Sequence record: OZ196212.1 | Direction: 5' to 3' (one strand) | DNA length: 64,000 nucleotides | Shown here: positions 1,847-56,956 of the stretch, in pieces | How the letters are laid out: each line of letters starts with the position of its first letter | How positions within the stretch are numbered: position 1 is the first letter of the stretch | Made by a program: the position numbers and the translations under genes | Notes under the pieces: model-generated | What the model was told of the DNA's origin: nothing | Databases searched by the model: none | What the model saw: only the letters and a program-made list of their open reading frames with translations

Positions 1847-3862
1847 ATGACTCTTTTATCACCGGGTATCGAAAATAAAGAGATTAACCTTGCAAGTGCT
1901 ATTGGTCGTGCGGCTACGGGTCGTGCAGCAATGGTGGGGAAATTTGAGTGGGGTCCAGCTTATAAGATCACTCAAGTAACTTCAGAATCGGACTTGGTTA
2001 CTATTTTCGGTCGTCCAAACGACTATACCGCAGCATCATTCATGACTGCAAACAACTTTCTAAAGTATGGTAATGACTTGCGCTTAGTTCGTATCTGTGA
2101 CGAAGCAACGGCACAGAACGCAACGGCTCTTTACCATGCAATCGACTACACAATCAGCACGTCAAACGGCTGTGTTGTAGGCGATGAGATTACAATCAAC
2201 TACTCTGGTGTAGGTGAGCTTACAGCTAAAGGTAAAGTTCTAGAAGTAGACGCTGCGAACAACAACGCTGCATCGAAAATCTGGCTACCTAGTGCTGAAA
2301 TCATCGCTGCTGCGAAAGCAGATGGCAACTACCCAAGTGTAGCAACGTTGACAATCACGCCAACGCAGGGTGATATCACAATCACAGAAGTAAGCATTCT
2401 GACTAATGGCTCAGTATACTTCCCGAACATCGACACTGCAACCGATGCACTGACAGCAATCGAAACAGAGGGTGGCGATCTTGAGTACGCAGACCTGATC
2501 GAGAAGCAAGGTTTCAGTCGTTTCGCTGCACGTTACGTTGGTGACTTCGGTGACGCGATTTCAGTTGAAGTGATCAACTACGCTGATTACACGACTGCAT
2601 TTGCATTCGCTGCTGATCATACGCTAGGTGACGTAGAACTACCAATCTACCCAGATGGTGGCACTCGCGATATCAACTTGACAAGCTACTTCGCATTTGG
2701 TCCCGCTAATAGCAACCAATACGCAGTTGTTGTGCGCGTATCTGGCGTTGTTGAAGAAGCGTTCATCGTTTCGACAAGTCGCTCAGACAAAGATGTAAAC
2801 GGTCAATCAATTTTCATCGACGAGTTCTTTGAAAATGGCGGTTCTCAGTACATCACTGCAATTGCAGAGGGCTGGAACAGTGAGTCGGCAGCATACAACT
2901 TCGGTGGTGGCTACGACGCAAACGCAGGCGCAGATGACTGGATGTTCGGTCTAGATATGCTTGCAGACTCAGAAGTGCTTTACACGAACTTGGTAATCGC
3001 GGGTAACGCGGCTGCTGAAGAAGTGTCAATCGCATCAACAGTACAAAAATACGCTATCGACTCAGTTGGTAACGTACGTCAAGACTGTGTTGTTTTCGTT
3101 TCACCACCTGCTGCACACGTTATCAACAAGCGTGCAGATGTTGCAGTAGCAAACATTCAAGGTTGGAGAACGGGTACTAACCCAACAAACGGTCAAGCAG
3201 TGAGCGACAATCTGAACGTAAGCACAACTTACGCAGTGATTGATGGCAACTATAAGTATCAGTATGACAAGTATTCAGATCGCAACAGATGGGTGCCTCT
3301 CGCGGGTGACATCGCGGGTCTGTGTGCTTACACTGATCAAGTGTCTCAACCTTGGATGTCGCCAGCGGGCTTCAATCGTGGTCAAATTAAGGGCGTAAAC
3401 CGTCTAGCACTTGATCTACGTCGTGCGCACCGTGATACGCTGTATCAACTGGGTATCAACCCTGTAGTGGGCTTTGCAGGTCAAGGCTTTGTGCTATACG
3501 GTGATAAGACTGCTACACAGCAATCGAGCGCATTCGACCGCATCAACGTGCGTCGCTTGTTCAACTTGTTGAAAAAAGCAATCTCAGACTCGGCTAAGTA
3601 CCGTCTGTTCGAATTGAATGACGAGTTTACTCGTACATCGTTCAAGTCAGAAATCGACGCATACTTGACGAACATTCAAGATCTTGGTGGCATCTACGAC
3701 TTCCGCGTAGTTTGTGATGAGACGAACAACCCAGGTTCAATTGTAGACCGCAACGAGTTTGTGGCGAGCATTTACGTGAAACCTGCGCGTTCAATCAACT
3801 TCATCACGCTTAACTTCGTTGCAACGTCTACGGACGCTGATTTCGACGAGATTATCGGCTAA
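1847..3862 (+). CDS. gp18: Tail sheath protein
   Basis: MTLLSPGIENKEIN start, F.WGP, RLVR, WMSPAGFNRG, FDRINVRRLF, YVKPARSINFITLNF motifs of T4 gp18. Confidence 0.97.
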   Translation: MTLLSPGIENKEINLASAIGRAATGRAAMVGKFEWGPAYKITQVTSESDLVTIFGRPNDYTAASFMTANNFLKYGNDLRLVRICDEATAQNATALYHAIDYTISTSNGCVVGDEITINYSGVGELTAKGKVLEVDAANNNAASKIWLPSAEIIAAAKADGNYPSVATLTITPTQGDITITEVSILTNGSVYFPNIDTATDALTAIETEGGDLEYADLIEKQGFSRFAARYVGDFGDAISVEVINYADYTTAFAFAADHTLGDVELPIYPDGGTRDINLTSYFAFGPANSNQYAVVVRVSGVVEEAFIVSTSRSDKDVNGQSIFIDEFFENGGSQYITAIAEGWNSESAAYNFGGGYDANAGADDWMFGLDMLADSEVLYTNLVIAGNAAAEEVSIASTVQKYAIDSVGNVRQDCVVFVSPPAAHVINKRADVAVANIQGWRTGTNPTNGQAVSDNLNVSTTYAVIDGNYKYQYDKYSDRNRWVPLAGDIAGLCAYTDQVSQPWMSPAGFNRGQIKGVNRLALDLRRAHRDTLYQLGINPVVGFAGQGFVLYGDKTATQQSSAFDRINVRRLFNLLKKAISDSAKYRLFELNDEFTRTSFKSEIDAYLTNIQDLGGIYDFRVVCDETNNPGSIVDRNEFVASIYVKPARSINFITLNFVATSTDADFDEIIG

Positions 3863-3872
3863 GAGCAATCAC

Positions 3873-3900
3873 GAGGGGCGTTTTTTAGCCCCTCTAAATA
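3873..3900 (+). promoter_or_regulatory. Stem-loop GAGGGGC/GCCCCTC overlapping a late-promoter variant TCTAAATA (gp19)
   Basis: Inverted repeat 3873-3894; TCTAAATA at 3893-3900, 16 nt before the gp19 ATG. Confidence 0.65.
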
Positions 3901-3916
3901 ATAAGGTATAGAGAAA

Positions 3917-4417
3917 ATGGCACTTAATGTAGACAGCATTAAAAGAGCTTTCGGTAACGGTGATTTCGCTCGTCCAAACTTGTTCGAAGTTGAGATTCCG
4001 TATCTGGGACAGAACTTTAAATTCCAATGTCGCGCTTCAGCAATGCCACCGGGTAGTGTTGAGAAGCTAGAAGTTTCTTATCAAAATCGCAAGTACAACA
4101 TTGCAGGTGATCGAACGTTCGATGACTGGAATGTGACAGTGTACAACGATGAGACGCACGACATTCGCAAAGCTATTTTAGCATGGCAATCGCGTGCAGT
4201 TGGCTTAGGCAAAGATGTGACTGGTGAAACGCCAGACCAATACAAGCGTACTGGTACGATTACTCAACTTGATCGTAACGGCGAACCAACAACATCAGCT
4301 ACAGTATACGGGATTTTCCCGACTATGGTTGGCGAAGTTGCTCTTGATTGGGATTCAAACAATGAAATCCAAACGTTTGAAGTAACATTCAGCTTAGACT
4401 ACTTCACAGTAGAATAA
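3917..4417 (+). CDS. gp19: Tail tube protein
   Basis: GDFARPNLFEVEI, AGDRTFDDWNVTVYND, LDWDSNNEIQTFEVTF motifs; between 18 and 20. Confidence 0.96.
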   Translation: MALNVDSIKRAFGNGDFARPNLFEVEIPYLGQNFKFQCRASAMPPGSVEKLEVSYQNRKYNIAGDRTFDDWNVTVYNDETHDIRKAILAWQSRAVGLGKDVTGETPDQYKRTGTITQLDRNGEPTTSATVYGIFPTMVGEVALDWDSNNEIQTFEVTFSLDYFTVE

Positions 4418-18898: not shown

Positions 18899-19414
18899 CT
18901 ACCCCAGAACTACGAATGAATTGGATAGATTGTCACGAACAAGCAGTTCGCCGCGCAGTGCAACCCAATATGCGATTGTCTGCAACTCGTGAGTATCGCG
19001 ATTGCCGATTAAGTACGCGTGAATGTCATCGTGCTTAACAACTTGGAACAATTCACCCTCATGGCGATACGAGGGCGTCCATTTCGGCTTGAATTCATCT
19101 TTGATGACGATTTCCACGTCGATTGACTCTACGGGATTGCTGATAACCACCTTTAAATCAACGTCAGTCGCTTCTAGAGTTGTTTCAACGATTGGCGCGT
19201 CTGATTCATCGACTAAATCACATGTCGTCTCTGAGCTGATTACAGACGTGTCTAGATAATCATCAGGAAAGCTAGTGATCTTATCGACGTTAGCCATGAT
19301 CAATCGAATCGCTGCTGATTTGGTTAGCGTCTTGTCGTATTCGATGTCAGTATGTTCAAGCTGAAACTCGATGACTTCGCGCTTCGTCTTGCCTTTCAAG
19401 TATTCTTCGTTCAT
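18899..19414 (-). CDS. inh: Second Inh-like protein
   Basis: N-terminal IEYDKTLTK, acidic middle, C-terminal TIAYWVALRGELLVRDNLSNSFVVL; divergent from uvsW like T4 inh. Confidence 0.68.
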   Translation of the reverse strand: MNEEYLKGKTKREVIEFQLEHTDIEYDKTLTKSAAIRLIMANVDKITSFPDDYLDTSVISSETTCDLVDESDAPIVETTLEATDVDLKVVISNPVESIDVEIVIKDEFKPKWTPSYRHEGELFQVVKHDDIHAYLIGNRDTHELQTIAYWVALRGELLVRDNLSNSFVVLG

Positions 19415-19644
19415 TTTGTTGCCTCATCATATTCAACTGTAATCCAGTTGTTTGTATTACAGTCAAAGAATGTAATTTGTGTAGTGTCAGTATAATTCTT
19501 TCGCATTTCTGCTTTGTTGCTATCAAGACGTGGTAAATACGAAGGGTCTAATGTTGCGTTGTATTCGATACCATGCAGTGTGAATTTATGCAATCCTTTT
19601 GCAAGTGCTTCGATTTTCTTGTCTCGCTTCGAGCGTAATTTCAT
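19411..19644 (-). CDS. Hypothetical protein (77 aa), possible SH3/WYL-like fold
   Basis: NATLDPSYLP...TFFDCNTNNW pattern; ATG 19644. Confidence 0.65.
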   Translation of the reverse strand: MKLRSKRDKKIEALAKGLHKFTLHGIEYNATLDPSYLPRLDSNKAEMRKNYTDTTQITFFDCNTNNWITVEYDEATK

Positions 19645-19658
19645 TGATTTCAAACCTC

Positions 19659-19685
19659 TATAAATACAGTTATAACATATTTAGA
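19659..19685. promoter_or_regulatory. Opposed late promoters: TATAAATA (+, uvsW) and TCTAAATA (-, inh operon)
   Basis: TATAAATA at 19659-19666; minus-strand TCTAAATA at 19678-19685. Confidence 0.7.
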
Positions 19686-36664: not shown

Positions 36665-38497
36665 ATGAAAGACGAAATTTTAGATATTGTTAGTGGTTCT
36701 GGTAACAACAAAGAAAACGCAAACAAAGATTCAAAAGTGATCCCAACAATGCGTGACTTGGTAGCAGGTACAGTATCGAAGCAATATGCACTTGAAGACA
36801 TATTGCCGAAAGAGATTGCCGACGCTCATATCAGCGGTGACATTCACTTTCACGATTTAGATTACAGTCCGCTGTTCCCGCAATTCAACTGCATGATCAT
36901 CGATATCAAAGGCATGTTTGAACATGGTTTTAAAATGGGTAACGCTGAAATCACAGAGCCGAATAGCATTTCGACTGCTGCGACTATCGTAACTCAGATT
37001 ATTCAACAAGTGTCTAGTCACATCTATGGCGGTAACACGATTAACCGCATTGATGAAGTGCTTGCACCGTATGTTCGCAAATCGTACTACAAATGGCTTG
37101 AAATCGGTCGCGAAGAACATCCCGACTCTGATTCGAAAGCTGCTATCTTCGCCCGCAAGCGCGTAGAGAAAGAAACGTACGACGCGTTCCAGACGTTTGA
37201 GTATCAAGTTAACACTATGCAGACATCGAATGGTCAAACGCCATTCACGACTATCAACTTCGGTCTTGGTACATCATGGGAAGAGAAGCTAATTCAAAAA
37301 AGCATTCTTCAGAATCGTATCGATGGTCTAGGTAAGACGCGCAAGACTGCGATTTTCCCTAAGCTTGTGTTCACGCTGCGCGATGGTGTCAATCTGAAAC
37401 AAGGTGACCCGTGTTACGGCATCAAGAAGCTTGCTCTTGAATGTGCGAGTAAACGCATGTATCCCGACGTTCTGAACTACGACCGATTAGTCGAAACGAC
37501 TGGTGGCTTTAAAGCACCAATGGGTTGTCGCTCGTTCTTAGGCGAATACGAAGAAAACGGTGAAGTGATTCACGATGGTCGAAACAATCTTGGCGTTGTG
37601 TCAGTGAACGTTCCGCGTATCGCGATTGAAGCAAGTGGCGACTTGGAAAGATTCTTTGAAATCTTACATGACCGCTGCACGATTGCGTTTGATGCTCTAA
37701 TGCTGCGTATAAAGCGTTTTGACGACGTTAAAGCGTCAGTTGCACCGATTCTATACACAGAAGGCGCGATGGGCGTACGATTGAATCCAGACGACAATGT
37801 AAGCGAAGTGTTCAAGAACGGTCGAGCAAGTATCTCACTTGGTTACATCGGGTTGCACGAAGCTGTTACGCTATTGTCTCATGACAAAGAATCGCATACG
37901 TTCAATTCGCATCACAAACAGTTCTTAGCTGAGAAGATCGTCGAGACGTTGCGCAAGTACACTGATATGTGGAAAGAAGCAACTGGTTACGGTTTCAGCT
38001 TGTACAGCACACCGAGCGAATCATTGTGTGATCGTTTCTGTCGTCTTGATCAAGAGAAATACGGTGTTATTCAAGGCATCAATGACAAAGACTACTACAC
38101 GAACTCGTTCCACTTAGATGTGTTCAAGAAAGTAAATCCGTTTGAGAAGATTGACTTCGAATCGCGATACCCTCAACACGCAAGTGGCGGTTTCATCGTT
38201 TACGCTGAGTTCCCGAACATGCGTGACAACTTGAAAGGTCTTGAGCGCGTATGGGATTACTCGTACACTCGCGTGCCGTACTTCGGTACTAACACGCCGA
38301 TTGATCAGTGTACGTGTGGTTGGTCTGGTGAAGCACATGCAGATTCGGATGGGTTCAGTTGTCCTACGTGTGGCGAACGCGACCCTGAGAAACTTCACGT
38401 GACTCGTCGAGTCTGTGGCTATCTCGGTAACCCGGGTGCTCGTGGTTGGAATCACGGCAAGACAGTTGAAATGAAAAATCGAGTTAAACACCAATAA
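36665..38497 (+). CDS. nrdD: Anaerobic ribonucleoside-triphosphate reductase
   Basis: ENANKDS, GDIHFHDLDY, NCM, QTPFTT, MGCRSFL, GRNNLGVVS, TPSESLC, zinc CTC..CPTC, RRVCGYLG glycyl-radical motif; no ATP cone or intron. Confidence 0.97.
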   Translation: MKDEILDIVSGSGNNKENANKDSKVIPTMRDLVAGTVSKQYALEDILPKEIADAHISGDIHFHDLDYSPLFPQFNCMIIDIKGMFEHGFKMGNAEITEPNSISTAATIVTQIIQQVSSHIYGGNTINRIDEVLAPYVRKSYYKWLEIGREEHPDSDSKAAIFARKRVEKETYDAFQTFEYQVNTMQTSNGQTPFTTINFGLGTSWEEKLIQKSILQNRIDGLGKTRKTAIFPKLVFTLRDGVNLKQGDPCYGIKKLALECASKRMYPDVLNYDRLVETTGGFKAPMGCRSFLGEYEENGEVIHDGRNNLGVVSVNVPRIAIEASGDLERFFEILHDRCTIAFDALMLRIKRFDDVKASVAPILYTEGAMGVRLNPDDNVSEVFKNGRASISLGYIGLHEAVTLLSHDKESHTFNSHHKQFLAEKIVETLRKYTDMWKEATGYGFSLYSTPSESLCDRFCRLDQEKYGVIQGINDKDYYTNSFHLDVFKKVNPFEKIDFESRYPQHASGGFIVYAEFPNMRDNLKGLERVWDYSYTRVPYFGTNTPIDQCTCGWSGEAHADSDGFSCPTCGERDPEKLHVTRRVCGYLGNPGARGWNHGKTVEMKNRVKHQ

Positions 38498-38522
38498 GAA
38501 AAGCGCCTTCGGGCGCTTTTTT
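38498..38522 (+). terminator. Terminator with UUCG loop
   Basis: AAAAGCGCC-TTCG-GGCGCTTTTTT. Confidence 0.88.
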
Positions 38523-38542: not shown

Positions 38543-38571
38543 TTGCACTGAAAATCAAATGAGCCTAATAT
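38543..38571 (+). promoter_or_regulatory. Early promoter TTGCAC-17-TAATAT
   Basis: Preceded by an A-tract; leader carries an 18-nt sequence repeated at 49182. Confidence 0.75.
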
Positions 38572-38616: not shown

Positions 38617-39024
38617 ATGCTATACATTAACTTGACTACTTGCTCTGTACTAACTTCTGAAGAAGCTCACAACGACCGTATGCAAGGTCACGATGTTCAA
38701 TCTCGTTGGGATTGGTCAACACTTGCGCAAGTAACTGACGTTTGTAACATGCTTGATCAAGAGAAGTACATGGTTGTTGAAACAAACGCACTGCCGAAGT
38801 ACGATATCATTGAGAAGCCGCGAGTTGGTGACGATGTTAGCTACTCATTCAACGGTGATTCTCGCCCTGACGGTCAAATCAAAAGCATTTCAAAAACAAT
38901 GAAGATCATCACTACTACGACTGGTAACAAATACTATCGTCGCGGTCAGTCTGCAACGTGGAAACGTAGCGGTACTTGGACTCTAGTTGGCGGTCATCAC
39001 AACAAAACAAACATGGAGTTTTAA
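38617..39024 (+). CDS. Early hypothetical protein (135 aa)
   Basis: SD GAGAG; first gene after the early promoter. Confidence 0.75.
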   Translation: MLYINLTTCSVLTSEEAHNDRMQGHDVQSRWDWSTLAQVTDVCNMLDQEKYMVVETNALPKYDIIEKPRVGDDVSYSFNGDSRPDGQIKSISKTMKIITTTTGNKYYRRGQSATWKRSGTWTLVGGHHNKTNMEF

Positions 39025-39025
39025 T

Positions 39026-39298
39026 ATGGTTCGTGTATTTCTTCCTGTGGCGGTAGTGTTACTATCGTCGCTGTTCTATCTCGCTCTTGATGGCGAAGCT
39101 AAAAAACATTCTGAAGCGTTTGAATTTGACGCGATGCAAATCGAACACCCAACGAAAGCATATGTGTACGATAAAGTATGCATGGACGGAATCGAATATT
39201 ACAGAATGGGGCGCGGCGCTGCACCTGTTGTAGACAAAGAAACACTAACATTTAAACGATGCTCGGAGACTAATGATGTACTTTCCCAAACGAATTAA
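39026..39298 (+). CDS. Hypothetical membrane-anchored protein (90 aa)
   Basis: SD GGAG; N-terminal hydrophobic helix; Cys pair. Confidence 0.7.
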   Translation: MVRVFLPVAVVLLSSLFYLALDGEAKKHSEAFEFDAMQIEHPTKAYVYDKVCMDGIEYYRMGRGAAPVVDKETLTFKRCSETNDVLSQTN

Positions 39299-39860
39299 AA
39301 CACCAACTACGAAGAACGTTCCGCTTAAAGTCGGCACTAAGCTGTCAGTGGATTGGAAGTATGTGAACTCGCTAGTGCAAAACGATGTTAATCTTGAACT
39401 CATCTATGAGTCTGACACGCAATACATCTTCTTAGATCTAGATAGCAACCTCGGCGCGACATTCTCGATGTCAAGAATCACCGGTGATGTTCATCGTACA
39501 TCAGACCGACGTGCGATATTCAACACATTTCAAACTGACACGGGCGAACCTATTGTAGTTGAGCGCGGTCAGCTTTGCGTGGCTGTTGATTGTGTATCTG
39601 AAGAGAAAATGCAATACACGCCAATCAAGCGCGGTGATACGCTGAGAACGCATCACTATGGCTCGCTTGAGCGTTCGACTGCTGTCGTGTTATTCGTAAC
39701 GCCTGAGTTCATCACTGTAGAAAGCAATAATGCACCGTTTACGTTCAGTCGAAGCGAAATCATTCGACGCGAATATTCGTACATCGCATCTAATCGCGGC
39801 TGTAAGATCGATACTGAAATCTTCTGTGGTATCCCTGAAAAGGATTCGATTGCACAATGA
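39273..39860 (+). CDS. Hypothetical protein (195 aa) with an internal duplication
   Basis: SD GGAG; PLKVGTKL.. and PIKRGDTL.. halves. Confidence 0.7.
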   Translation: MMYFPKRIKTPTTKNVPLKVGTKLSVDWKYVNSLVQNDVNLELIYESDTQYIFLDLDSNLGATFSMSRITGDVHRTSDRRAIFNTFQTDTGEPIVVERGQLCVAVDCVSEEKMQYTPIKRGDTLRTHHYGSLERSTAVVLFVTPEFITVESNNAPFTFSRSEIIRREYSYIASNRGCKIDTEIFCGIPEKDSIAQ

Positions 39861-40324
39861 AGTATCAAGCCATAAACGAGTTTGACTTTGCAAACGGCGA
39901 GGGTGTTCGATTGAGCATCTTCGTTTCTGGTTGTATTCATCGCTGTGCGGGCTGCTACAACGAATCGACGTGGGATGTGAACGATGGTATCGAATTCACT
40001 GACGAAACGTTTAGAAGCGTTCTGAGCGCATTAGAGCATCACGACGGTCTGAGTCTATCGGGCGGTGATCCGCTTCATGAAGACAATCGCAAAGTGATAC
40101 TTGATATCTGCCGAGCTGCAAAAGAGCTGTATCCCGACAAAGACATTTGGCTATGGAGCGGCTACAAATATAATTCTGTTTATCATCTTGAAATTATGAA
40201 TTATATTGATGTCTTCATAGACGGGAAATATAAACGTCATCAGCCGACTACGAAAGCGTGGCGCGGTTCTGATAATCAAATCATGTACGTTCGCGTAGAT
40301 GATAAACTAATCAATAAGGGATAA
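39857..40324 (+). CDS. nrdG: Anaerobic RNR activating enzyme (radical SAM)
   Basis: NGEGVRLSIFVSGCIHRCAGCYN, LSGGDPL, WLWSGY, DVFIDGKY, WRGSDNQ. Confidence 0.96.
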   Translation: MKYQAINEFDFANGEGVRLSIFVSGCIHRCAGCYNESTWDVNDGIEFTDETFRSVLSALEHHDGLSLSGGDPLHEDNRKVILDICRAAKELYPDKDIWLWSGYKYNSVYHLEIMNYIDVFIDGKYKRHQPTTKAWRGSDNQIMYVRVDDKLINKG

Positions 40325-40325
40325 T

Positions 40326-40850
40326 ATGAGTTGCGTTTGGATTACAAGTGACCTGCATATTGGTCACAAAAACATCGGGAAGTTTCGCGACGGTATCGAA
40401 GATACTCAAGCAAACACCGATTGGATTGTTGACTTCTGGCTGAAGAACGTGCGCAAGCGCGATACAGTAATCATGTTGGGTGATACTGCGTTCACCGAAG
40501 AAGCAATCGGCATTTTAGCGGGCTTACCGGGTCGCAAAGTGCAATACGGTGGGAATCACGATGATTTGCCAGTCACAAGCTACATGCGTGCGTTTGACGT
40601 AATTCGTGGCTGTGAGAAGTTCAAGAAACTTGGTTGGCTAAGTCATTTCCCACTTCACCCCGACGAGCTGCGCGGTCATTTCAGCATTCACGGTCACGTG
40701 CATTATGCAACGATTGATGATTATCGTTACGTCAACGTGTGCTGCGACAACTTACAGCGCAATATTGGTCAGCCGATGATTCGCTTGACTGATCTTCGTC
40801 AATTGCTCGACAAACGTCGTGAATCAAAAGAGGTCTCTTACGACTTCTAA
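40326..40850 (+). CDS. Calcineurin-like metallophosphoesterase
   Basis: SDLHIGH, LGD, GNHD, SHFP, IHGHVH motifs. Confidence 0.88.
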   Translation: MSCVWITSDLHIGHKNIGKFRDGIEDTQANTDWIVDFWLKNVRKRDTVIMLGDTAFTEEAIGILAGLPGRKVQYGGNHDDLPVTSYMRAFDVIRGCEKFKKLGWLSHFPLHPDELRGHFSIHGHVHYATIDDYRYVNVCCDNLQRNIGQPMIRLTDLRQLLDKRRESKEVSYDF

Positions 40851-40863
40851 TCCGTAGTCTATC

Positions 40864-40911
40864 TGCATGAACATCTAAATACAGGCATGTATTAAAAATG
40901 GTGTTCATGCA
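40864..40911 (+). promoter_or_regulatory. Late promoter TCTAAATA inside an RBS-sequestering hairpin
   Basis: TGCATGAACATC (40864-40875) pairs with GGTGTTCATGCA (40900-40911); inner AATACA/TGTATT stem with GGCA loop; TCTAAATA at 40874-40881. Confidence 0.72.
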
Positions 40912-40913
40912 CT

Positions 40914-41759
40914 ATGATAGATGTTTTATTGAGATATAACGTCAAGATACTCAATAGTCGAAAGCTTGTTATCTACACAGATGAGAATCGCTTGAAGCTA
41001 ATTGTGGACTTGGCTAAAGAACTCGATGGCGAATACGTTAAGTGTGACCCGGGCAGTTCAATTGGTTGTATACAGATGGATAAATGCAGAATATACGTCA
41101 AACCAATATCTAATCCTGGCATCGAGAATGAACGCAATTTCTATACTATTGTAAAGCAACATATTGATTCTGGCTGCAAGCGAATTAAGATTGGTCGACG
41201 CGTGATCACGAATGTACTGTCAATTGAAATGACGGGGCATGACACGAAGAACAACAAAAAAGCCGATATGGTGATTCATACCAGTAGCGGTGAAGTTCCG
41301 ATCTCTATCAAAAAATCAAATGCTGAACGTTGGGCAAGCACTGACGTTATTCATGGCGTTGAAGCACGCAAGCTACTAGATCAAATGGTTCACGATGACA
41401 CAGTAAAACTTTCGGATTATTCGGACTGTGGCAAGATCAAGCGATTAAGTCAACCGATTGCTCGTCGTCTCAAAGAGGCTGAGATCAATCAAGTAGTATT
41501 CGGCTCTGATATCTTGAACAATGGCGTGGTTATCGTCAATAGCTTTACATTAGATGATTTTGTTTTCAATAACGATACACTACATATTAGCGGTGAAGTG
41601 CTTTATTCGTCTGCTGACGTTAAAGACACGATTTACCACCCGTATATGATGATTAGAAATGACGCTTGTCGCCGTAGTAAGGCATTGCCTTATGGTGTAC
41701 GAGTCGAAGTTGTATTCGAGTCACGAATTACGAAAAACACGATTGTTTACGAGGAGTAA
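40914..41759 (+). CDS. Putative PD-(D/E)XK-fold endonuclease (281 aa)
   Basis: GIENERNF (helix Glu), KKADMVI (Asp), PISIKK (S-x-K) arrangement. Confidence 0.6.
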   Translation: MIDVLLRYNVKILNSRKLVIYTDENRLKLIVDLAKELDGEYVKCDPGSSIGCIQMDKCRIYVKPISNPGIENERNFYTIVKQHIDSGCKRIKIGRRVITNVLSIEMTGHDTKNNKKADMVIHTSSGEVPISIKKSNAERWASTDVIHGVEARKLLDQMVHDDTVKLSDYSDCGKIKRLSQPIARRLKEAEINQVVFGSDILNNGVVIVNSFTLDDFVFNNDTLHISGEVLYSSADVKDTIYHPYMMIRNDACRRSKALPYGVRVEVVFESRITKNTIVYEE

Positions 41760-41762
41760 CCA

Positions 41763-42584
41763 TTGAACATTAAAGATAGAATAGAAGAGCTAATCGGCTC
41801 GGTTCACAACTGCACTACCAAAGATGGTGTATGTGAAATCGAAAAGCTGTACGCTCAGAAGAAAAAAGAACTAGGTGCGAACATTACTCCTATGATGGAC
41901 ATCCGCGTGCGCGATGCAATTCGTGGTAAGTGCGATATGTTCGACGCTGAAGCTGCTGAACGCGAAGAAGCAAAGCAAGTGAAAGAAACTGAAGCTGCGG
42001 CTGCTGCAATTGCGGGTAAATTCGACGAGGGTTTGCATCACACGACCGAGAAAGAGTTTTTCTTGCACGAGACTGTGATTGATGAATCAGCGATTGATGC
42101 AATGTGTATCATGGACGTTGACGGCAGTATCCCAACGAACGGACACAAAGAGCTGAGTAAATCGCTTGCTGAGGCGTGTGATCACGTTAACGCGCAAGGT
42201 CGAATCTTTGTACCAGAAGAAGCAAACAAGCTGTTGAGCATTAACGAGCGCGTTGAAATCATCGAATCGTTCTCTGACGTTGACGTTGTTCCGAAAGGCG
42301 TGATGTTTGCTGAAGTTGAACAGTTGATCGAGCGCGACATTACTCGCGTGTTTGCATTCGTTGAATCTGACAAAGTAGCTGAATATCGTCGTCTGGGTAA
42401 ACACTTCTTGCGTTCTGGTGGTCGTCGCTTCGAGATCGTTGAAATCAAGAACAAAGTACCATCGAACATCGTTGAGAATTTGATTCGCGATGACAGTCTA
42501 GAAGAGTTTTTCGAGCAGATGCCGATGCCAATGAACGAAGCTGAGAAGATCTTTGATCGTCAGCTTGAACGTCTATTGGGGTAA
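41763..42584 (+). CDS. Hypothetical protein (273 aa)
   Basis: Long ORF with SD GAGGAG, TTG start, coupled in the same operon. Confidence 0.75.
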   Translation: MNIKDRIEELIGSVHNCTTKDGVCEIEKLYAQKKKELGANITPMMDIRVRDAIRGKCDMFDAEAAEREEAKQVKETEAAAAAIAGKFDEGLHHTTEKEFFLHETVIDESAIDAMCIMDVDGSIPTNGHKELSKSLAEACDHVNAQGRIFVPEEANKLLSINERVEIIESFSDVDVVPKGVMFAEVEQLIERDITRVFAFVESDKVAEYRRLGKHFLRSGGRRFEIVEIKNKVPSNIVENLIRDDSLEEFFEQMPMPMNEAEKIFDRQLERLLG

Positions 42585-42587
42585 TCT

Positions 42588-43073
42588 ATGGCAGACACAG
42601 CTAAACGAGGCGCAGACGGCTTTTATGCACTGCGTTTGTCTACTCTGTTACACATGCCGTTTCAGAAATGGGACGCGTATAAGCGTGGTATCATTGATAA
42701 AGATGGTAAAAAGCTGCGTGACGCTGAATCTAGCGAGAAAGGTTCGTGGACTATGTTTCACGTGACTGTAGCTAACATCAAGAAAATGGTGAACATGCTA
42801 CCGGGTGGTCGTACTGCATTAGATTACGGTGCGTCATATCTGTTGATGATTGAAATCAAAGATCACTACAATTTAAGTGACGAGTTCATTAATGAACTGC
42901 GTTCGCTTGAAGAATCAATGGTCGCGGGTGATGCAGGTGATGGAAGTGGCTCGGCAGAGTCGATTGCGACTGGTGAAACTACTGGTGCAATCACGAACGC
43001 AGGTGCGGGAGCAACTGCAAAGCCGAAGAAGAAAAAGAAGAAAAAGCTGAAGAAATTCAGACATTTCGACTAA
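42588..43073 (+). CDS. 61.1: gp61.1-like protein (161 aa)
   Basis: PF.KWDAYK.GIIDKDG domain of T4-like phages plus tail MVAGDAG..IATGETTGAITN.G..KKKK like T4 61.1; just upstream of gene 61. Confidence 0.72.
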   Translation: MADTAKRGADGFYALRLSTLLHMPFQKWDAYKRGIIDKDGKKLRDAESSEKGSWTMFHVTVANIKKMVNMLPGGRTALDYGASYLLMIEIKDHYNLSDEFINELRSLEESMVAGDAGDGSGSAESIATGETTGAITNAGAGATAKPKKKKKKKLKKFRHFD

Positions 43074-43076
43074 AAT

Positions 43077-43098
43077 AGGGGCGTTTTCGCCCCTTTTT
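43077..43098 (+). terminator. Rho-independent terminator
   Basis: AGGGGCG-TTTT-CGCCCCT-TTTT. Confidence 0.85.
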
Positions 43099-43100
43099 AA

Positions 43101-54573: not shown

Positions 54574-54782
54574 TGAGAGAAGTCTTAGATAGCTATACCA
54601 AGGTGTGTGCTGATTATCGCACCGACCTGAACGAAATTTCTGTATCACAATCCGATTACTATATCGTGCAACTGTATGCGATTCTAGTTACACTCGGGTT
54701 CGCAGTCGAGACAATCATTTTCTGGTTGTTCGTTGCAATCGTGTATGCACCAATCGCGCTAATTGGCGGGTGGGTTAAATAA
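54573..54782 (+). CDS. Hypothetical membrane protein
   Basis: TAATG overlap; C-terminal hydrophobic stretch. Confidence 0.62.
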   Translation: MREVLDSYTKVCADYRTDLNEISVSQSDYYIVQLYAILVTLGFAVETIIFWLFVAIVYAPIALIGGWVK

Positions 54783-54791
54783 GAGACGGAG

Positions 54792-55070
54792 GTGGCAATT
54801 ATGCTCAAGTCTTTTATAGAACACGATAGATTCACAGAAATGACGTACCAAGAGTTGCGTGATCTCACGATCAATGAGATTCACGCGCTCGTTCGCAAGC
54901 TGAAGAAACAGCTTCCGAAGAAGTACAAAGATATTATCGACGAAATCGAAGTCGATATGTATGAAGATCTTATCGCGGAAATCGCTTATAACGGTGGTTT
55001 GCGAGGTAAGAAATTCACAAACATGGCAATTCCTAAGAAAATCTTAGACAGGTATGCCGATTATTACTAA
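54792..55070 (+). CDS. Hypothetical protein (92 aa)
   Basis: SD GGAGG region; coupled ORF. Confidence 0.68.
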   Translation: MAIMLKSFIEHDRFTEMTYQELRDLTINEIHALVRKLKKQLPKKYKDIIDEIEVDMYEDLIAEIAYNGGLRGKKFTNMAIPKKILDRYADYY

Positions 55071-56668: not shown

Positions 56669-56676
56669 TTTAAATA
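56669..56676 (+). promoter_or_regulatory. Possible late-promoter variant TTTAAATA
   Basis: One mismatch to TATAAATA, 34 nt before ORF 56711. Confidence 0.45.
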
Positions 56677-56710
56677 CGTGCGTCTAATAATAAAACTTAA
56701 AAGGTAAAAT

Positions 56711-56956
56711 ATGACGCACGATTTTAATATGCTCCTTGAGCAGTACAACCTAGCAAACTTTGAATGCGATGGTGACTTCGAGGACTATTACTGGTCAGTA
56801 GCCGAATGGATCGGTCAAACGATTTTCAGTCACGGTACGCTTCGAAAAACTGACTTTCTTGAACTATTGTGTGATTTGCTTGAAATCACTGAAGATGAAA
56901 TCAACGTCGATGAAGTCGATGATTTCTTGAACGAAGTATATGAACTAAACGAATAG
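56711..56956 (+). CDS. Highly acidic hypothetical protein (81 aa)
   Basis: SD AAGG; 22 D/E against 2 K/R. Confidence 0.75.
   Translation: MTHDFNMLLEQYNLANFECDGDFEDYYWSVAEWIGQTIFSHGTLRKTDFLELLCDLLEITEDEINVDEVDDFLNEVYELNE

What the first reader, a model, noticed from the sequence alone, without database searches (positions are those of the whole stretch)
40864..41759. Late-only translation switch guarding a putative PD-(D/E)XK nuclease
Seen: a 12-bp outer stem (40864-40875 with 40900-40911) and a 6-bp inner stem with a GNRA (GGCA) loop bury the likely SD (GGTG, 40900-40903) just before ATG 40914. The late promoter TCTAAATA lies in the 5' arm, and no terminator separates this gene from the upstream nrdG operon. 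Known: T4 uses this design (a hairpin on early read-through RNA, absent from late RNA) for e, soc, 49 and I-TevI. Inference: a toxic, late-restricted endonuclease, either a free-standing homing-type enzyme of an unusual fold or a competitor/host DNA nuclease, heading a three-gene late island in the replication cluster.
Basis: partly seen in the sequence, partly recalled or inferred. Interest (0 to 1): 0.72.

Follow-up and report, generated by a model that had tools for sequence, protein, structure and literature searches.

The report
Late-only switch on CviJI-like nuclease gene
In this KVP40-like Vibrio phage, an RNA hairpin hides the ribosome-binding site of an uncharacterised gene whose predicted fold resembles restriction enzymes; a late promoter inside the hairpin should let it be translated only late, the design phage T4 uses for its lysozyme, and relatives in many T4-like phages are kept late in similar ways.

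Summary
Window = Vibrio phage D527 (KVP40-like). A composite hairpin (40857-40922; 7+12+6 bp; -26.3 kcal/mol, z -5.3) pairs the SD-like GGUGUUC and the AUG of ORF 40914-41759. It is the most occluded start of 91 genes in the window. TCTAAATA (40874-40881) is a real late-promoter variant here: it also precedes the tail tube and gp34 fibre genes. A late RNA starting near 40887 lacks all 5' arms, and RBS opening cost falls from about 16 to about 7.5 kcal/mol. Orthologues keep the design with different stem sequences. In 38 of 51 distinct homologue loci a late-promoter motif precedes the gene (about 5% expected), together with either an RBS hairpin or an upstream terminator. One error: the GGCA loop is not GNRA.

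The protein has no Pfam or PDB match. Its confident AF2 model matches predicted structures of chlorovirus R.CviJI, Nt.CviQII and a NYs-1 endonuclease (E 1e-8 to 1e-6). A PD-(D/E)XK core is plausible (E73, D118, S131-x-K133) but unproven. It is a syntenic core gene after gp41, not a homing endonuclease. Nothing was tested experimentally. This is a new member of a known regulatory design, on a new nuclease-like family that may be linked to 7-deazaguanine DNA modification.

The parts
38497..38522 (+). Intrinsic terminator after nrdD. It is the last terminator upstream of the switch. The genes 38617-40850 (three hypotheticals, nrdG, phosphoesterase) follow with no terminator before 40914.
   Evidence: 11-bp stem plus T-run; annotation
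40857..40863 (+). 5' arm of the outer 7-bp helix. It pairs with 40916-40922 (the G of AUG and codons 2-3).
   Evidence: 100% of cells paired in 8 distinct KVP40-like sequences; one G.U to A-U change
40864..40875 (+). 5' arm of the 12-bp helix. It pairs with 40900-40911.
   Evidence: 1.081.O has a C-G to U-A change and an A-U to G.U change. In L015 all 12 pairs are kept although the two arms differ from D527 at many positions, about half of the pairs by my reading.
40874..40881 (+). TCTAAATA, a gp55-type late-promoter motif (-13 to -6). It is invariant in all 9 aligned KVP40-like phages, including its two unpaired bases T40876 and A40877.
   Evidence: The same octamer lies 16-40 nt upstream of the tail tube gene, the gp34-like fibre gene and two other genes.
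40878..40893 (+). Inner hairpin: 6 bp (40878-83/40888-93) with loop GGCA (not GNRA). The loop and the closing pair vary between phages.
40885..40889 (+). Predicted 5' end of the late transcript. +1 is A40887 if the T4 spacing rule applies. It lies downstream of all three 5' arms.
   Evidence: Inference from the T4 rule that the motif occupies -13 to -6 (PMC1524935). Folding of truncated RNAs.
40900..40911 (+). 3' arm of the 12-bp helix. It holds the SD-like GGUGUUC (40900-40906; 6 of 7 bases complementary to the 16S 3' end by my own comparison).
40914..41759 (+). ORF of 281 aa (VPHD527_0051, the KVP40.0017 orthologue). Uncharacterised family (phrog_12709). Predicted fold is related to chlorovirus R.CviJI, Nt.CviQII and a NYs-1 endonuclease. 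Invariant residues are E73, K116, D118, K133, F196, G197, D199 and R253.
41763..42584 (+). Gene 2 (273 aa, TTG start after GAGGAG). It has an N-terminal UvsW.1 domain, a long helix, and a C-terminal HIGH-type nucleotidyltransferase-like domain (PTxGH). It is annotated 'DNA helicase' but no helicase domain was found.
   Evidence: detected in 6E351A particle preparations
42588..43073 (+). Gene 3 (161 aa, phrog_2086) with a Lys-rich C-terminal tail. Detected in particle preparations.
43077..43094 (+). Strong intrinsic terminator (7-bp stem with 6 G-C pairs, then TTTTT) that closes the three-gene unit, 6 nt before the primase start at 43100.

Best explanation
ORF 40914-41759 is a late-restricted gene controlled as T4 controls e, soc, 49 and I-TevI.

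Mechanism:
- Transcripts that read through from the upstream nrdG/phosphoesterase genes fold a 25-bp composite hairpin. It pairs the Shine-Dalgarno-like GGUGUUC and the AUG, so 30S subunits cannot bind.
- After replication starts, gp55-RNA polymerase initiates at TCTAAATA (40874-40881), inside the DNA that encodes the 5' arms. The late RNA begins near A40887 and lacks all three 5' arms, so its ribosome-binding site is about as open as that of an average gene.
- The late RNA runs through two more genes to the terminator at 43077-43094.

The product is most likely a Mg-dependent DNA endonuclease of the family that includes the chlorovirus restriction and nicking enzymes R.CviJI and Nt.CviQII, probably with a PD-(D/E)XK-type core. 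It is a vertically inherited core gene of many T4-like phages, placed after uvsX-41.

Shown here (in silico): the structure, its exceptional stability, its conservation and covariation, use of the motif at late genes, and the family-wide association with late promoters and insulating structures.

Inferred: the late 5' end, differential translation, nuclease activity and its target.

The confidence of 0.6 is for the whole statement. On its own I would put the switch at about 0.75 and the active-nuclease part at about 0.5.
For: Structure:
- MFE -26.3 kcal/mol, z -5.26.
- Highest RBS opening cost of 91 genes: 15.9 against a median of 5.8 kcal/mol.
- Read-through RNAs cost about 16 kcal/mol to open; RNAs starting at 40884-40894 cost 7.1-9.5.
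- The difference (ddG) is 8.6, against -1.5 to 4.2 for 11 other late-motif genes of the window.

Promoter:
- Eleven of the 14 ..TAAATA octamers within 60 nt upstream of a gene start are TATAAATA (6) or TCTAAATA (5).
- TCTAAATA precedes the tail tube gene, the gp34-like fibre gene, two further genes and this ORF.
- No other late motif lies between 40882 and 54773.
- No terminator lies between 38522 and 43077.

Conservation:
- The hairpin and motif are nearly invariant in 9 KVP40-like phages whose flanking coding DNA is 76-88% identical.
- Unpaired T40876/A40877 inside the motif are invariant, while the opposite internal loop varies.
- G.U pairs and the strand asymmetry of the covariance-model score (100 bits against 22) point to RNA on the + strand.

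Independent lineages carry a late motif plus a hairpin whose 3' arm holds the SD (opening cost long RNA to late RNA, kcal/mol):
- L015 (57% identity): 22.1 to 7.5, with all 12 pairs kept.
- L014 (53%): 21.0 to 4.0. L010 (35%, TATAAATA): 18.7 to 3.0. L019: 19.8 to 5.0. L086: 21.8 to 5.6.
- D479 (42%): GATAAATA plus a 9-bp hairpin over the SD AAGGA (opening cost not computed).

Family level:
- 38 of 51 distinct loci have [AC]TAAATA within 170 nt before the gene; 5.5% is expected.
- 15 of 38 have opening cost of at least 13 kcal/mol, against 3 of 49 control late-motif genes in the same loci (Fisher p 3e-4). Median ddG is 5.65 against 0.6 (Mann-Whitney p 5e-8).
- Lineages without an RBS hairpin often have an intrinsic terminator just upstream of the late motif (L020, L024, L025, L043, L044, L050, L060, L074).

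Protein:
- AF2 pLDDT 95.4.
- Foldseek against BFVD: R.CviJI E 1.2e-8 (TMq 0.56), Nt.CviQII 3.1e-7, NYs-1 endonuclease 8.6e-7.
- Invariant E73 on a helix, D118 at the start of a strand, and S131-x-K133 at the end of the next strand.
- dN/dS 3e-5.

T4 precedent: PMC3014915. Products of genes 2 and 3 were found in particle preparations of the 98.8% identical phage 6E351A.
Against: - No transcript ends, ribosome profiling or reporters exist for any KVP40-like phage. Literature searches for KVP40 late promoters and transcriptomes turned up none.
- Within the KVP40 clade covariation is thin: one compensatory pair and two one-sided changes, and 65 of 500 shuffles do as well. The structural argument therefore rests on more distant orthologues.
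- The predicted late RNA can still form a weak local hairpin over the SD. Its opening cost of 7.5 kcal/mol is somewhat above the median of 5.8.
- C at position -12 is rare in most T4-like phages, Aeh1 excepted (PMC1524935).
- The nuclease assignment rests on similarity between two predicted structures at 12-14% sequence identity.
- There is no significant PDB match (best E 0.17, TM at most 0.24) and no match in Pfam, NCBIfam or PADLOC.
- The canonical acidic residue of (D/E)xK is Ser.
- No methyltransferase is adjacent.
- The protein was not detected in particle preparations.
Confidence: 0.6

Rival explanations
1. There is no internal promoter. The hairpin is a translational coupling or trans-activated gate, and TCTAAATA is conserved only because it is part of the stems. 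The start would be opened by ribosomes terminating at the phosphoesterase stop (40848-40850), or by a phage factor (helicase, RNase cut, RegA-like protein), not by a shorter late transcript.
For: The stop codon lies 7 nt before the outer helix, so a terminating ribosome should melt much of the 7-bp outer helix that covers the AUG. Six of the eight motif bases are base-paired in the RNA. No late 5' end has been mapped.
Against: A terminating ribosome would leave the 12-bp helix over the SD intact. RNAs starting at 40864 still cost 15.8 kcal/mol to open. The two unpaired motif bases are invariant while the facing loop varies. The same octamer precedes tail tube and tail fibre genes. Distant orthologues with unrelated stems still carry TATAAATA, CTAAATA or GATAAATA at the same place, 38 of 51 against 5.5% expected. 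In several lineages the upstream gene differs or a terminator intervenes, which rules out coupling there.
Confidence: 0.12
2. The hairpin acts mainly on the RNA itself, as a processing site (RNase III or RNase E), a stabiliser, or an attenuator of early transcription, rather than on translation initiation.
For: It is a long, nearly perfect helix, the kind of substrate RNase III accepts. In some homologue loci (L053, L062, L069, L094) the equivalent hairpin is followed by a U-run and looks like an intrinsic terminator.
Against: In D527 and all KVP40-likes no U-run follows the hairpin; GCACTATGATAG follows instead. The 3' arm always carries the SD or start codon, which a stability or processing element does not need. 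An RNase III cut would not by itself explain the embedded late motif. This rival can coexist with the main explanation.
Confidence: 0.08
3. The switch is real, but the protein is not an active nuclease. It would be a DNA-binding or structural late protein that has merely kept a nuclease-like fold.
For: There is no significant match to any solved nuclease and no family model hit. The (D/E)xK acid is Ser131. Genes 2 and 3 of the unit are particle-associated, and gene 3 was filed under head morphogenesis.
Against: Invariant charged residues E73, K116, D118, K133 and D199 across 79 diverse members are typical of a catalytic site. The closest annotated structural relatives are experimentally characterised endonucleases (PMC7019647). 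Weak PDB hits are dominated by PD-(D/E)XK enzymes: Hjc, Hje, HincII, I-Ssp6803I and RecU. The protein itself was not found in particles.
Confidence: 0.2
4. The palindrome works at the DNA level, for example as a protein-binding site, recombination hotspot or origin element.
For: It is an inverted repeat in an intergenic region of the replication cluster.
Against: G.U pairs (T40874.G40901, and A to G in 1.081.O) would be A.C mismatches on the other strand. The covariance model scores 100 bits on the + strand and 22 on the - strand. Orthologous stems differ in sequence but always overlap the RBS. The element occurs only once in the window.
Confidence: 0.03

Closest known systems
T4 gene e (lysozyme), soc, 49 and I-TevI: inhibitory leader hairpin on early read-through RNA with a late promoter in the DNA encoding the 5' strand (Uzan & Miller 2010, PMC3014915). 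Also the Aeh1 mobE RBS hairpin.
   Same: The SD and/or AUG are paired in a helix. A TATAAATA-type late promoter sits in the DNA encoding the 5' arm, so late RNA lacks the inhibitory strand. The gene lies downstream of early genes with no terminator between. The cargo is a protein that could be harmful if made early; in T4 two of the four cargoes are nucleases.
   Different: This is a different phage genus and a different gene family. The promoter variant is TCTAAATA. The structure is a three-helix composite of 25 bp rather than a simple stem. Here the arrangement is traceable across a whole protein family, in which lineages swap between an RBS hairpin, a terminator, or both. No experimental data exist.
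Chlorovirus restriction and nicking endonucleases R.CviJI (RG/CY) and Nt.CviQII (R/AG), plus a PBCV NYs-1 'Endonuclease' that may be Nt.CviPII (/CCD)
   Same: Predicted-structure similarity runs over 250-300 columns (Foldseek E 1e-8 to 1e-6, probability 1.00, TMq 0.46-0.56). Both are virus-encoded.
   Different: Sequence identity is only 12-14% and no sequence-level link was found. No adjacent methyltransferase is present. The phage protein is shorter (281 aa against 358-582). Chlorovirus restriction enzymes are packaged in virions (PMC7019647), whereas this protein was not detected in 6E351A particles. The CviJI family had no assigned fold in Orlowski & Bujnicki 2008.
PD-(D/E)XK nucleases with a Ser-x-Lys variant of the third motif (Cfr10I/NgoMIV type; from my own knowledge, not checked here)
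   Same: A conserved Glu on a helix (E73), an Asp at the start of a strand (D118), S131-x-K133 on the following strand, and an invariant acid at the start of the next helix (D144). The secondary-structure order fits the alpha-beta-beta-beta-alpha core.
   Different: No significant structural or profile match to any solved PD-(D/E)XK enzyme. I could not inspect model coordinates to confirm that the residues cluster.

Membership tests
T4-type late-only translation switch (hairpin on read-through RNA, late promoter in the 5' arm) | The SD and/or start codon are paired in a stable local helix on the long transcript | tested here: met
   Predicted only. MFE -26.3 kcal/mol, z -5.26. Opening cost 15.9 kcal/mol, rank 1 of 91 genes.
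T4-type late-only translation switch (hairpin on read-through RNA, late promoter in the 5' arm) | A gp55-type late promoter is placed so that the late RNA starts downstream of the inhibitory 5' strand | tested here: met
   Motif at 40874-40881. The same octamer lies upstream of the tail tube and gp34-like fibre genes. Predicted +1 at 40887 lies 3' of all 5' arms. The actual 5' end is not mapped.
T4-type late-only translation switch (hairpin on read-through RNA, late promoter in the 5' arm) | Read-through transcription from upstream early or middle genes reaches the gene | tested here: inconclusive
   No terminator-like site lies between 38522 and 43077 on the + strand apart from weak in-gene matches. 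Only a weak sigma-70-like site was seen by eye at 38543-38571. There are no transcript data.
T4-type late-only translation switch (hairpin on read-through RNA, late promoter in the 5' arm) | Translation is low from long RNA and high from late RNA | not testable with these tools
   Only the computed opening costs are available: about 16 against about 7.5 kcal/mol.
T4-type late-only translation switch (hairpin on read-through RNA, late promoter in the 5' arm) | The structure is maintained by selection (covariation) | tested here: met
   Weak inside the KVP40 clade: 1 compensatory pair, 65 of 500 shuffles as good. Clear in L015, where the stem sequence differs yet all 12 pairs are kept. Also clear in unrelated stems of L010, L014, L019, L086 and D479. 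Family against control p 5e-8.
PD-(D/E)XK nuclease superfamily | Core alpha-beta-beta-beta-alpha-beta fold with E / D / (D/E)xK on helix 1, strand 2 and strand 3 | tested here: inconclusive
   E73 lies on helix 68-85, D118 before strand 119-123, and S131-I-K133 at the end of strand 126-133. The third acid is replaced by Ser.
PD-(D/E)XK nuclease superfamily | Significant similarity to a solved or curated member | tested here: not met
   Profile against PDB sequences: 0 hits at E up to 10. Foldseek against PDB: best E 0.17. Hjc, Hje, HincII, I-Ssp6803I and RecU appear only at E 0.2-1.5 with TM at most 0.24. No Pfam hit in 79 members except one BsuBI_PstI_RE match at E 0.0086.
CviJI-like restriction/nicking endonucleases | Shared fold over most of the protein | tested here: met
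   Foldseek against BFVD: R.CviJI E 1.2e-8, TMq 0.56, 307 columns; Nt.CviQII 3.1e-7; NYs-1 endonuclease 8.6e-7; N751L 1.4e-7. Both sides are predicted structures.
CviJI-like restriction/nicking endonucleases | Detectable sequence homology | tested here: not met
   phmmer against 1.84 billion representatives and a profile search returned only unnamed members of the phage family. Identity in the structural alignments is 12-14%.
CviJI-like restriction/nicking endonucleases | Companion DNA methyltransferase next to the endonuclease gene | tested here: not met
   The neighbours are a phosphoesterase, the UvsW.1/nucleotidyltransferase-like protein and ORF161. The only annotated DNA methyltransferase seen in 1-113 kb is at 109930-110505 of the genome.
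CviJI-like restriction/nicking endonucleases | Site-specific cleavage or nicking of DNA | not testable with these tools
   Needs purified protein.
Free-standing homing endonuclease | Sporadic, insertion-like distribution between conserved genes, and a known homing-endonuclease catalytic family | tested here: not met
   The gene is present in all 18 V. crassostreae Schizotequatroviruses of that study (BBH group size 18 of 18). It keeps the same position after uvsX-41 in most of 49 distinct T4-like loci. dN/dS is 3e-5. No GIY-YIG, HNH or LAGLIDADG match was found.

The most novel reading that the evidence does not exclude
The 281-aa protein would be the restriction half of a phage-borne self/non-self system whose modification half is the 7-deazaguanine (dPreQ1) pathway (FolE-QueD/E/C-QueF-DpdA2).

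Proposed logic: DpdA exchanges guanine after replication, so the nuclease must be withheld until phage DNA is modified. That would explain the family-wide pressure to keep the gene late by hairpin or terminator. Its targets would be unmodified DNA: the host chromosome, co-infecting phages, or under-modified phage genomes before packaging.

Hints:
- Of 50,697 phage records, 69 carry the nuclease homologue and 71 carry a DpdA2-type gene.
- The overlap includes the KVP40-likes listed in both searches, 16 Stenotrophomonas (Menderavirus) records in each search, and Xanthomonas phage BUDD.
- In BUDD the homologue lies two genes from FolE. In Moby it lies about 5 kb from DpdA.
- 6E351A DNA has 15% of dG replaced.

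Against:
- Only about 3 independent clades support the link, and they are related to each other.
- D479, EniLVp02 and S-8S55 have the nuclease without a DpdA2-type hit.
- pf16, ACP17 and BUCT-ZZ01 have the reverse.
Probability: 0.15. Interest if true: 0.8.

Novelty: new member of a known kind. Interest (0 to 1): 0.55.

Why it matters
It extends the T4 'hairpin plus embedded late promoter' design to the KVP40-like vibriophages. It also shows that one protein family carries this kind of insulation across many T4-like lineages. Some lineages use an RBS hairpin, some a terminator, and some a single hairpin that appears to serve as both. That is comparative evidence that early expression of this protein is selected against.

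It gives a first functional lead for a widespread, unannotated core gene (KVP40.0017, phrog_12709; about 300 clusters at 50% identity): a restriction/nicking-endonuclease-like fold. It also points to a testable link with 7-deazaguanine DNA modification.

The leader is a compact natural part (about 70 nt) for late-only expression in vibriophage engineering.

Tried and rejected
- Sequence searches for the protein gave nothing beyond phrog_12709 'unknown function': Pfam, PHROGs, NCBIfam, PADLOC and PDB sequences, single and profile.
- A profile search of the 5.8-billion-protein set found only unnamed family members.
- Cluster names for the longer relatives were empty.
- Foldseek against PDB gave no significant hit.
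- The search for related loci with the 79-sequence alignment failed because no stretch was conserved enough. A 12-sequence alignment worked.
- MAFFT misaligned the divergent leaders, so I used a covariance model. It recovered L016 and L015 but not more distant leaders, which I compared by independent folding.
- Rejected: replacement of gp49 endonuclease VII. KVP40-likes have gp49.
- Rejected: virion-packaged nuclease as in chloroviruses. The protein was not detected in 6E351A particles, although that preparation also held gp32, dUTPase and thymidylate synthase, so it is not a clean test.
- Rejected: gene 2 as a PD-(D/E)XK nuclease. The weak UPF0102 hit did not hold up; gene 2's C-terminal domain has a nucleotidyltransferase fold.
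- No Rfam family matches the leader.
- Literature searches for KVP40 late promoters and transcriptomes turned up no transcript data for KVP40-like phages. The KVP40 genome paper and the Nt.CviPII cloning paper are not held.
Full report
**What the window is.** Positions 40300-42600 are 100% identical to Vibrio phage D527 (OZ196212.1) at the same coordinates. The closest classified relatives are KVP40-like Schizotequatroviruses. The local gene order is uvsX, 40, 41, nrdD, terminator, three small ORFs, nrdG, phosphoesterase, the ORF in question (40914-41759), a 'DNA helicase' (41763-42584), a 161-aa ORF (42588-43073), terminator, primase 61, dUTPase.

**The observation.**
- The 12-bp helix 40864-75/40900-11 has one G.U pair.
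- The 6-bp inner helix is 40878-83/40888-93.
- GGTG lies at 40900-03, ATG at 40914 and TCTAAATA at 40874-81.
- RNAfold adds a 7-bp outer helix (40857-63/40916-22) that pairs the G of AUG and the next two codons.
- The whole structure has MFE -26.3 kcal/mol. Shuffles give -11.8 +/- 2.8, z = -5.26, and 0 of 200 shuffles do as well.
- The loop GGCA is not GNRA and is not conserved.
- The cost of unpairing -16..+6 around the start codon, computed for all 91 annotated genes, is highest for this gene: 15.9 kcal/mol against a median of 5.8 and sd of 3.0.
- The element occurs once in the window and matches no Rfam family.

**Is TCTAAATA a late promoter here?** The window holds true late genes. Of the 14 ..TAAATA octamers within 60 nt upstream of a gene start, six are TATAAATA and five are TCTAAATA.
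- TATAAATA precedes the sheath gene, gp22, gp23, uvsW and two others.
- TCTAAATA precedes the tail tube gene, the gp34-like proximal fibre gene, two further genes and this ORF.
- Both octamers are about four times more frequent than in shuffles.
- The T4 rule places the motif at -13 to -6. A C at -12 is the norm in Aeh1 (PMC1524935).
- This puts +1 at A40887, 3' of all three 5' arms.
- No other late motif lies between 40882 and 54773.

**Long RNA against late RNA.** RNAs with 5' ends from 40714 to 40864 cost 15.8-16.7 kcal/mol to open at the RBS. RNAs starting at 40884-40894 cost 7.1-9.5. The difference of 8.6 compares with -1.5 to 4.2 for eleven other late-motif genes in the window. A weak alternative hairpin over the SD remains in the late RNA.

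**Transcription unit.** Strong intrinsic terminators lie at 38497-38522 (after nrdD) and 43077-43094 (after the 161-aa ORF). Nothing convincing lies between them. Read-through from the nrdG/phosphoesterase genes is therefore plausible, and the late RNA would cover three genes. Gene 2 has its own GAGGAG Shine-Dalgarno sequence and a TTG start; I did not test it for occlusion. Only the first gene is gated by this hairpin.

**Conservation.**
- In nine KVP40-like phages the 66-nt structure and the motif are almost invariant, while the flanking coding DNA is 76-88% identical.
- The unpaired motif bases T40876 and A40877 never vary, whereas the facing internal loop does.
- Formal covariation within this clade is small: 97.5% of cells paired, one compensatory C-G to U-A change, two one-sided changes, and 65 of 500 shuffles as good.
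- A covariance model built from seven sequences aligns the metagenomic orthologue L015 (57% protein identity) with all 12 pairs of the main helix kept, although the stem sequence differs at many positions. It scores the + strand at 100 bits and the - strand at 22.

**More distant orthologues.** Several carry unrelated stems in the same arrangement, with a late motif in or just before the 5' arm and the SD in the 3' arm. Opening costs, long RNA to late RNA, in kcal/mol:
- L014 (53% identity, CCTAAATA): 21.0 to 4.0.
- L010 (35%, TATAAATA): 18.7 to 3.0.
- L019: 19.8 to 5.0.
- L086: 21.8 to 5.6.

Vibrio phage D479 (42% identity) has GATAAATA followed by the 9-bp hairpin GCATACGTC/GACGTATGC, which covers the SD AAGGA. 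I did not compute its opening cost.

**Family-level pattern.** The protein family has 299 representatives at 50% identity clustering. I fetched 80 viral-contig loci.
- Of 51 distinct loci, 38 have [AC]TAAATA within 170 nt before the aligned N-terminus. The rate elsewhere on the same strand of the same loci predicts 5.5%.
- Among 38 loci with a motif/ATG pair, 15 have an RBS opening cost of at least 13 kcal/mol. Among 49 other late-motif-headed ORFs in those loci, 3 do (Fisher p 3e-4).
- Median ddG is 5.65 against 0.6 (Mann-Whitney p 5e-8). The loci are not fully independent.
- Lineages without an RBS hairpin often have an intrinsic terminator immediately upstream of the late motif (L020, L024, L025, L043, L044, L050, L060, L074).
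- In L053, L062, L069 and L094 one hairpin looks like both a terminator and an RBS trap.
- My reading is that selection keeps this gene silent on early RNA, by whichever device.

**The protein.**
- Pfam, NCBIfam, PADLOC and PDB sequence searches are empty. PHROGs gives phrog_12709, function unknown.
- A 79-sequence alignment has invariant E73, K116, D118, K133, F196, G197, D199 and R253. S131, W140, S142, D144 and several arginines are nearly invariant.
- The AlphaFold model is confident (pLDDT 95.4, pTM 0.85).
- E73 lies on helix 68-85, D118 at the start of strand 119-123, S131-x-K133 at the end of strand 126-133, and D144 at the start of the next helix. This is the order expected of a PD-(D/E)XK core with a Ser-x-Lys variant.
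- Foldseek against the PDB finds nothing significant. The weak hits are mostly PD-(D/E)XK enzymes (Hjc, Hje, HincII, I-Ssp6803I, RecU) at E 0.2-1.5.
- Against predicted viral structures (BFVD) the model matches R.CviJI (E 1.2e-8, TMq 0.56), Nt.CviQII (3.1e-7), a PBCV NYs-1 endonuclease (8.6e-7) and N751L, as well as cyanophage and Stenotrophomonas phage proteins.
- The CviJI family had no assigned fold in the 2008 classification (PMC2441816).
- 'Nuclease-like fold related to CviJI-type enzymes' is therefore supported. 'PD-(D/E)XK' is plausible but unproven.

**Not a homing endonuclease.**
- Homologues sit directly after uvsX-(40)-41 in most of 49 distinct T4-like loci.
- The gene is present in all 18 V. 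crassostreae Schizotequatroviruses of one study, with dN/dS 3e-5.
- Isolated phages with it are KVP40-likes, D479, EniLVp02, the Stenotrophomonas Menderaviruses, Synechococcus phage S-8S55 and Xanthomonas phage BUDD. In all of them it is annotated 'hypothetical'.
- KVP40-likes also keep gp49, so this gene is not a substitute for endonuclease VII.

**Experimental data from others.** Particle proteomics of 6E351A (98.8% identical over this stretch) detected the products of gene 2 (7 and 19 counts) and gene 3 (11 and 24 counts) but not the 281-aa protein. This fits late production of the unit and argues against chlorovirus-style packaging of the nuclease (PMC7019647). However, gp32, dUTPase and thymidylate synthase were also found in that preparation, so it is not a clean test.

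**Neighbours.** Gene 2 is annotated 'DNA helicase'. In fact it is a UvsW.1 domain, a long helix, and a C-terminal HIGH-type nucleotidyltransferase-like domain with motif PTxGH. Foldseek against the PDB gives PPAT, FAD synthetase and NMNAT at E 2e-4 and weaker. Menderaviruses also have a cytidylyltransferase-like gene two genes after their homologue.

**A lead.** The same paper reports that 15% of dG in 6E351A DNA is replaced by dPreQ1.
- A DpdA2-type gene occurs in 71 of 50,697 phage records, and the nuclease homologue in 69.
- The overlap includes the KVP40-likes listed in both searches, 16 Stenotrophomonas records in each search, and BUDD.
- In BUDD the homologue is two genes from FolE. In Moby it is about 5 kb from DpdA.
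- There are exceptions in both directions, and only about three related clades support the link. I treat it as a hypothesis.

**Verdict.** The regulatory reading is the best-supported explanation and is a new instance of the T4 e/soc/49/I-TevI design (PMC3014915). The protein is a new, widespread, late-restricted family with a nuclease-like fold, and its target is unknown. Nothing here was tested at the bench.

Noticed in passing
window 56669-56725: TTTAAATA (56669-56676) is followed by CGUGCGUC, which pairs with GACGCACG at and just after the AUG of the small gene 56711-56956. RBS opening cost is 12.6 kcal/mol on long RNA and 2.0 on an RNA starting 6 nt after the motif (ddG 10.6). This may be a second late-only switch in the early region.
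   Followed up: partly
window 54774-54815: GTTAAATA lies 19 nt before gene 54801-55070, with an occluded RBS (11.9 to 4.3 kcal/mol). The geometry is the same, but the motif is further from the consensus.
   Followed up: partly
window 41763-42584: This gene is annotated 'DNA helicase' (phrog_14207) in all relatives. It contains only a UvsW.1 domain plus a HIGH-type nucleotidyltransferase-like domain (PTxGH; Foldseek PPAT/FADS/NMNAT, E 2e-4). No helicase domain was found by the Pfam scan or the fold search. It was detected in 6E351A particle preparations.
   Followed up: yes
window 42588-43073: The 161-aa protein ends in a Lys-rich tail (KPKKKKKKKLKKFRHFD). It was detected in particle preparations and filed under 'head morphogenesis' by others. 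It may be an internal, DNA-binding head protein.
   Followed up: partly
window 43077-43100: The primase (gene 61) start codon lies 6 nt after the terminator, so its RBS region is inside the terminator hairpin and T-run (opening cost 14.2 kcal/mol, third highest in the window).
   Followed up: no
window 19659-19685: Back-to-back late motifs: TATAAATA (+) for uvsW (19710) and TCTAAATA (-) for gene 19411-19644, 12 nt apart. As in T4, uvsW appears to be late.
   Followed up: no
phrog_12709: The PHROG profile is 552 positions long and the 281-aa protein matches only positions 1-280. 281 + 273 aa is about 552, so some member is probably a fusion or a mis-called read-through of this ORF with the following UvsW.1 gene.
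   Followed up: no
L099 1-84 (MW824377 nrdD) against window 36665-38497: nrdD is annotated as a fragment/pseudogene in phage 6E35.1a but is an intact 610-aa ORF in this window.
   Followed up: no
L100 35281-39039 (D527 99281-103039); L101; L102: The 7-deazaguanine cluster (FolE, DpdA2-like, QueF-like, QueC) lies 59 kb from the ORF in D527. In Xanthomonas phage BUDD and the Menderaviruses the ORF281 homologue lies within 1-6 kb of the cluster.
   Followed up: partly
L053 about 2150-2200; L062 about 620-675; L094 about 3900-3952: In these T4-like contigs one hairpin contains or directly follows the late motif, is followed by a U-run, and has the SD in its 3' arm. It looks like a combined terminator and RBS trap.
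   Followed up: partly
window 3860-3917: The terminator after the sheath gene (GAGGGGC...GCCCCTC) overlaps the TC of the tail tube late promoter TCTAAATA. Terminator-then-late-promoter pairs also occur at about 17350 (-) and about 60240 (+).
   Followed up: no
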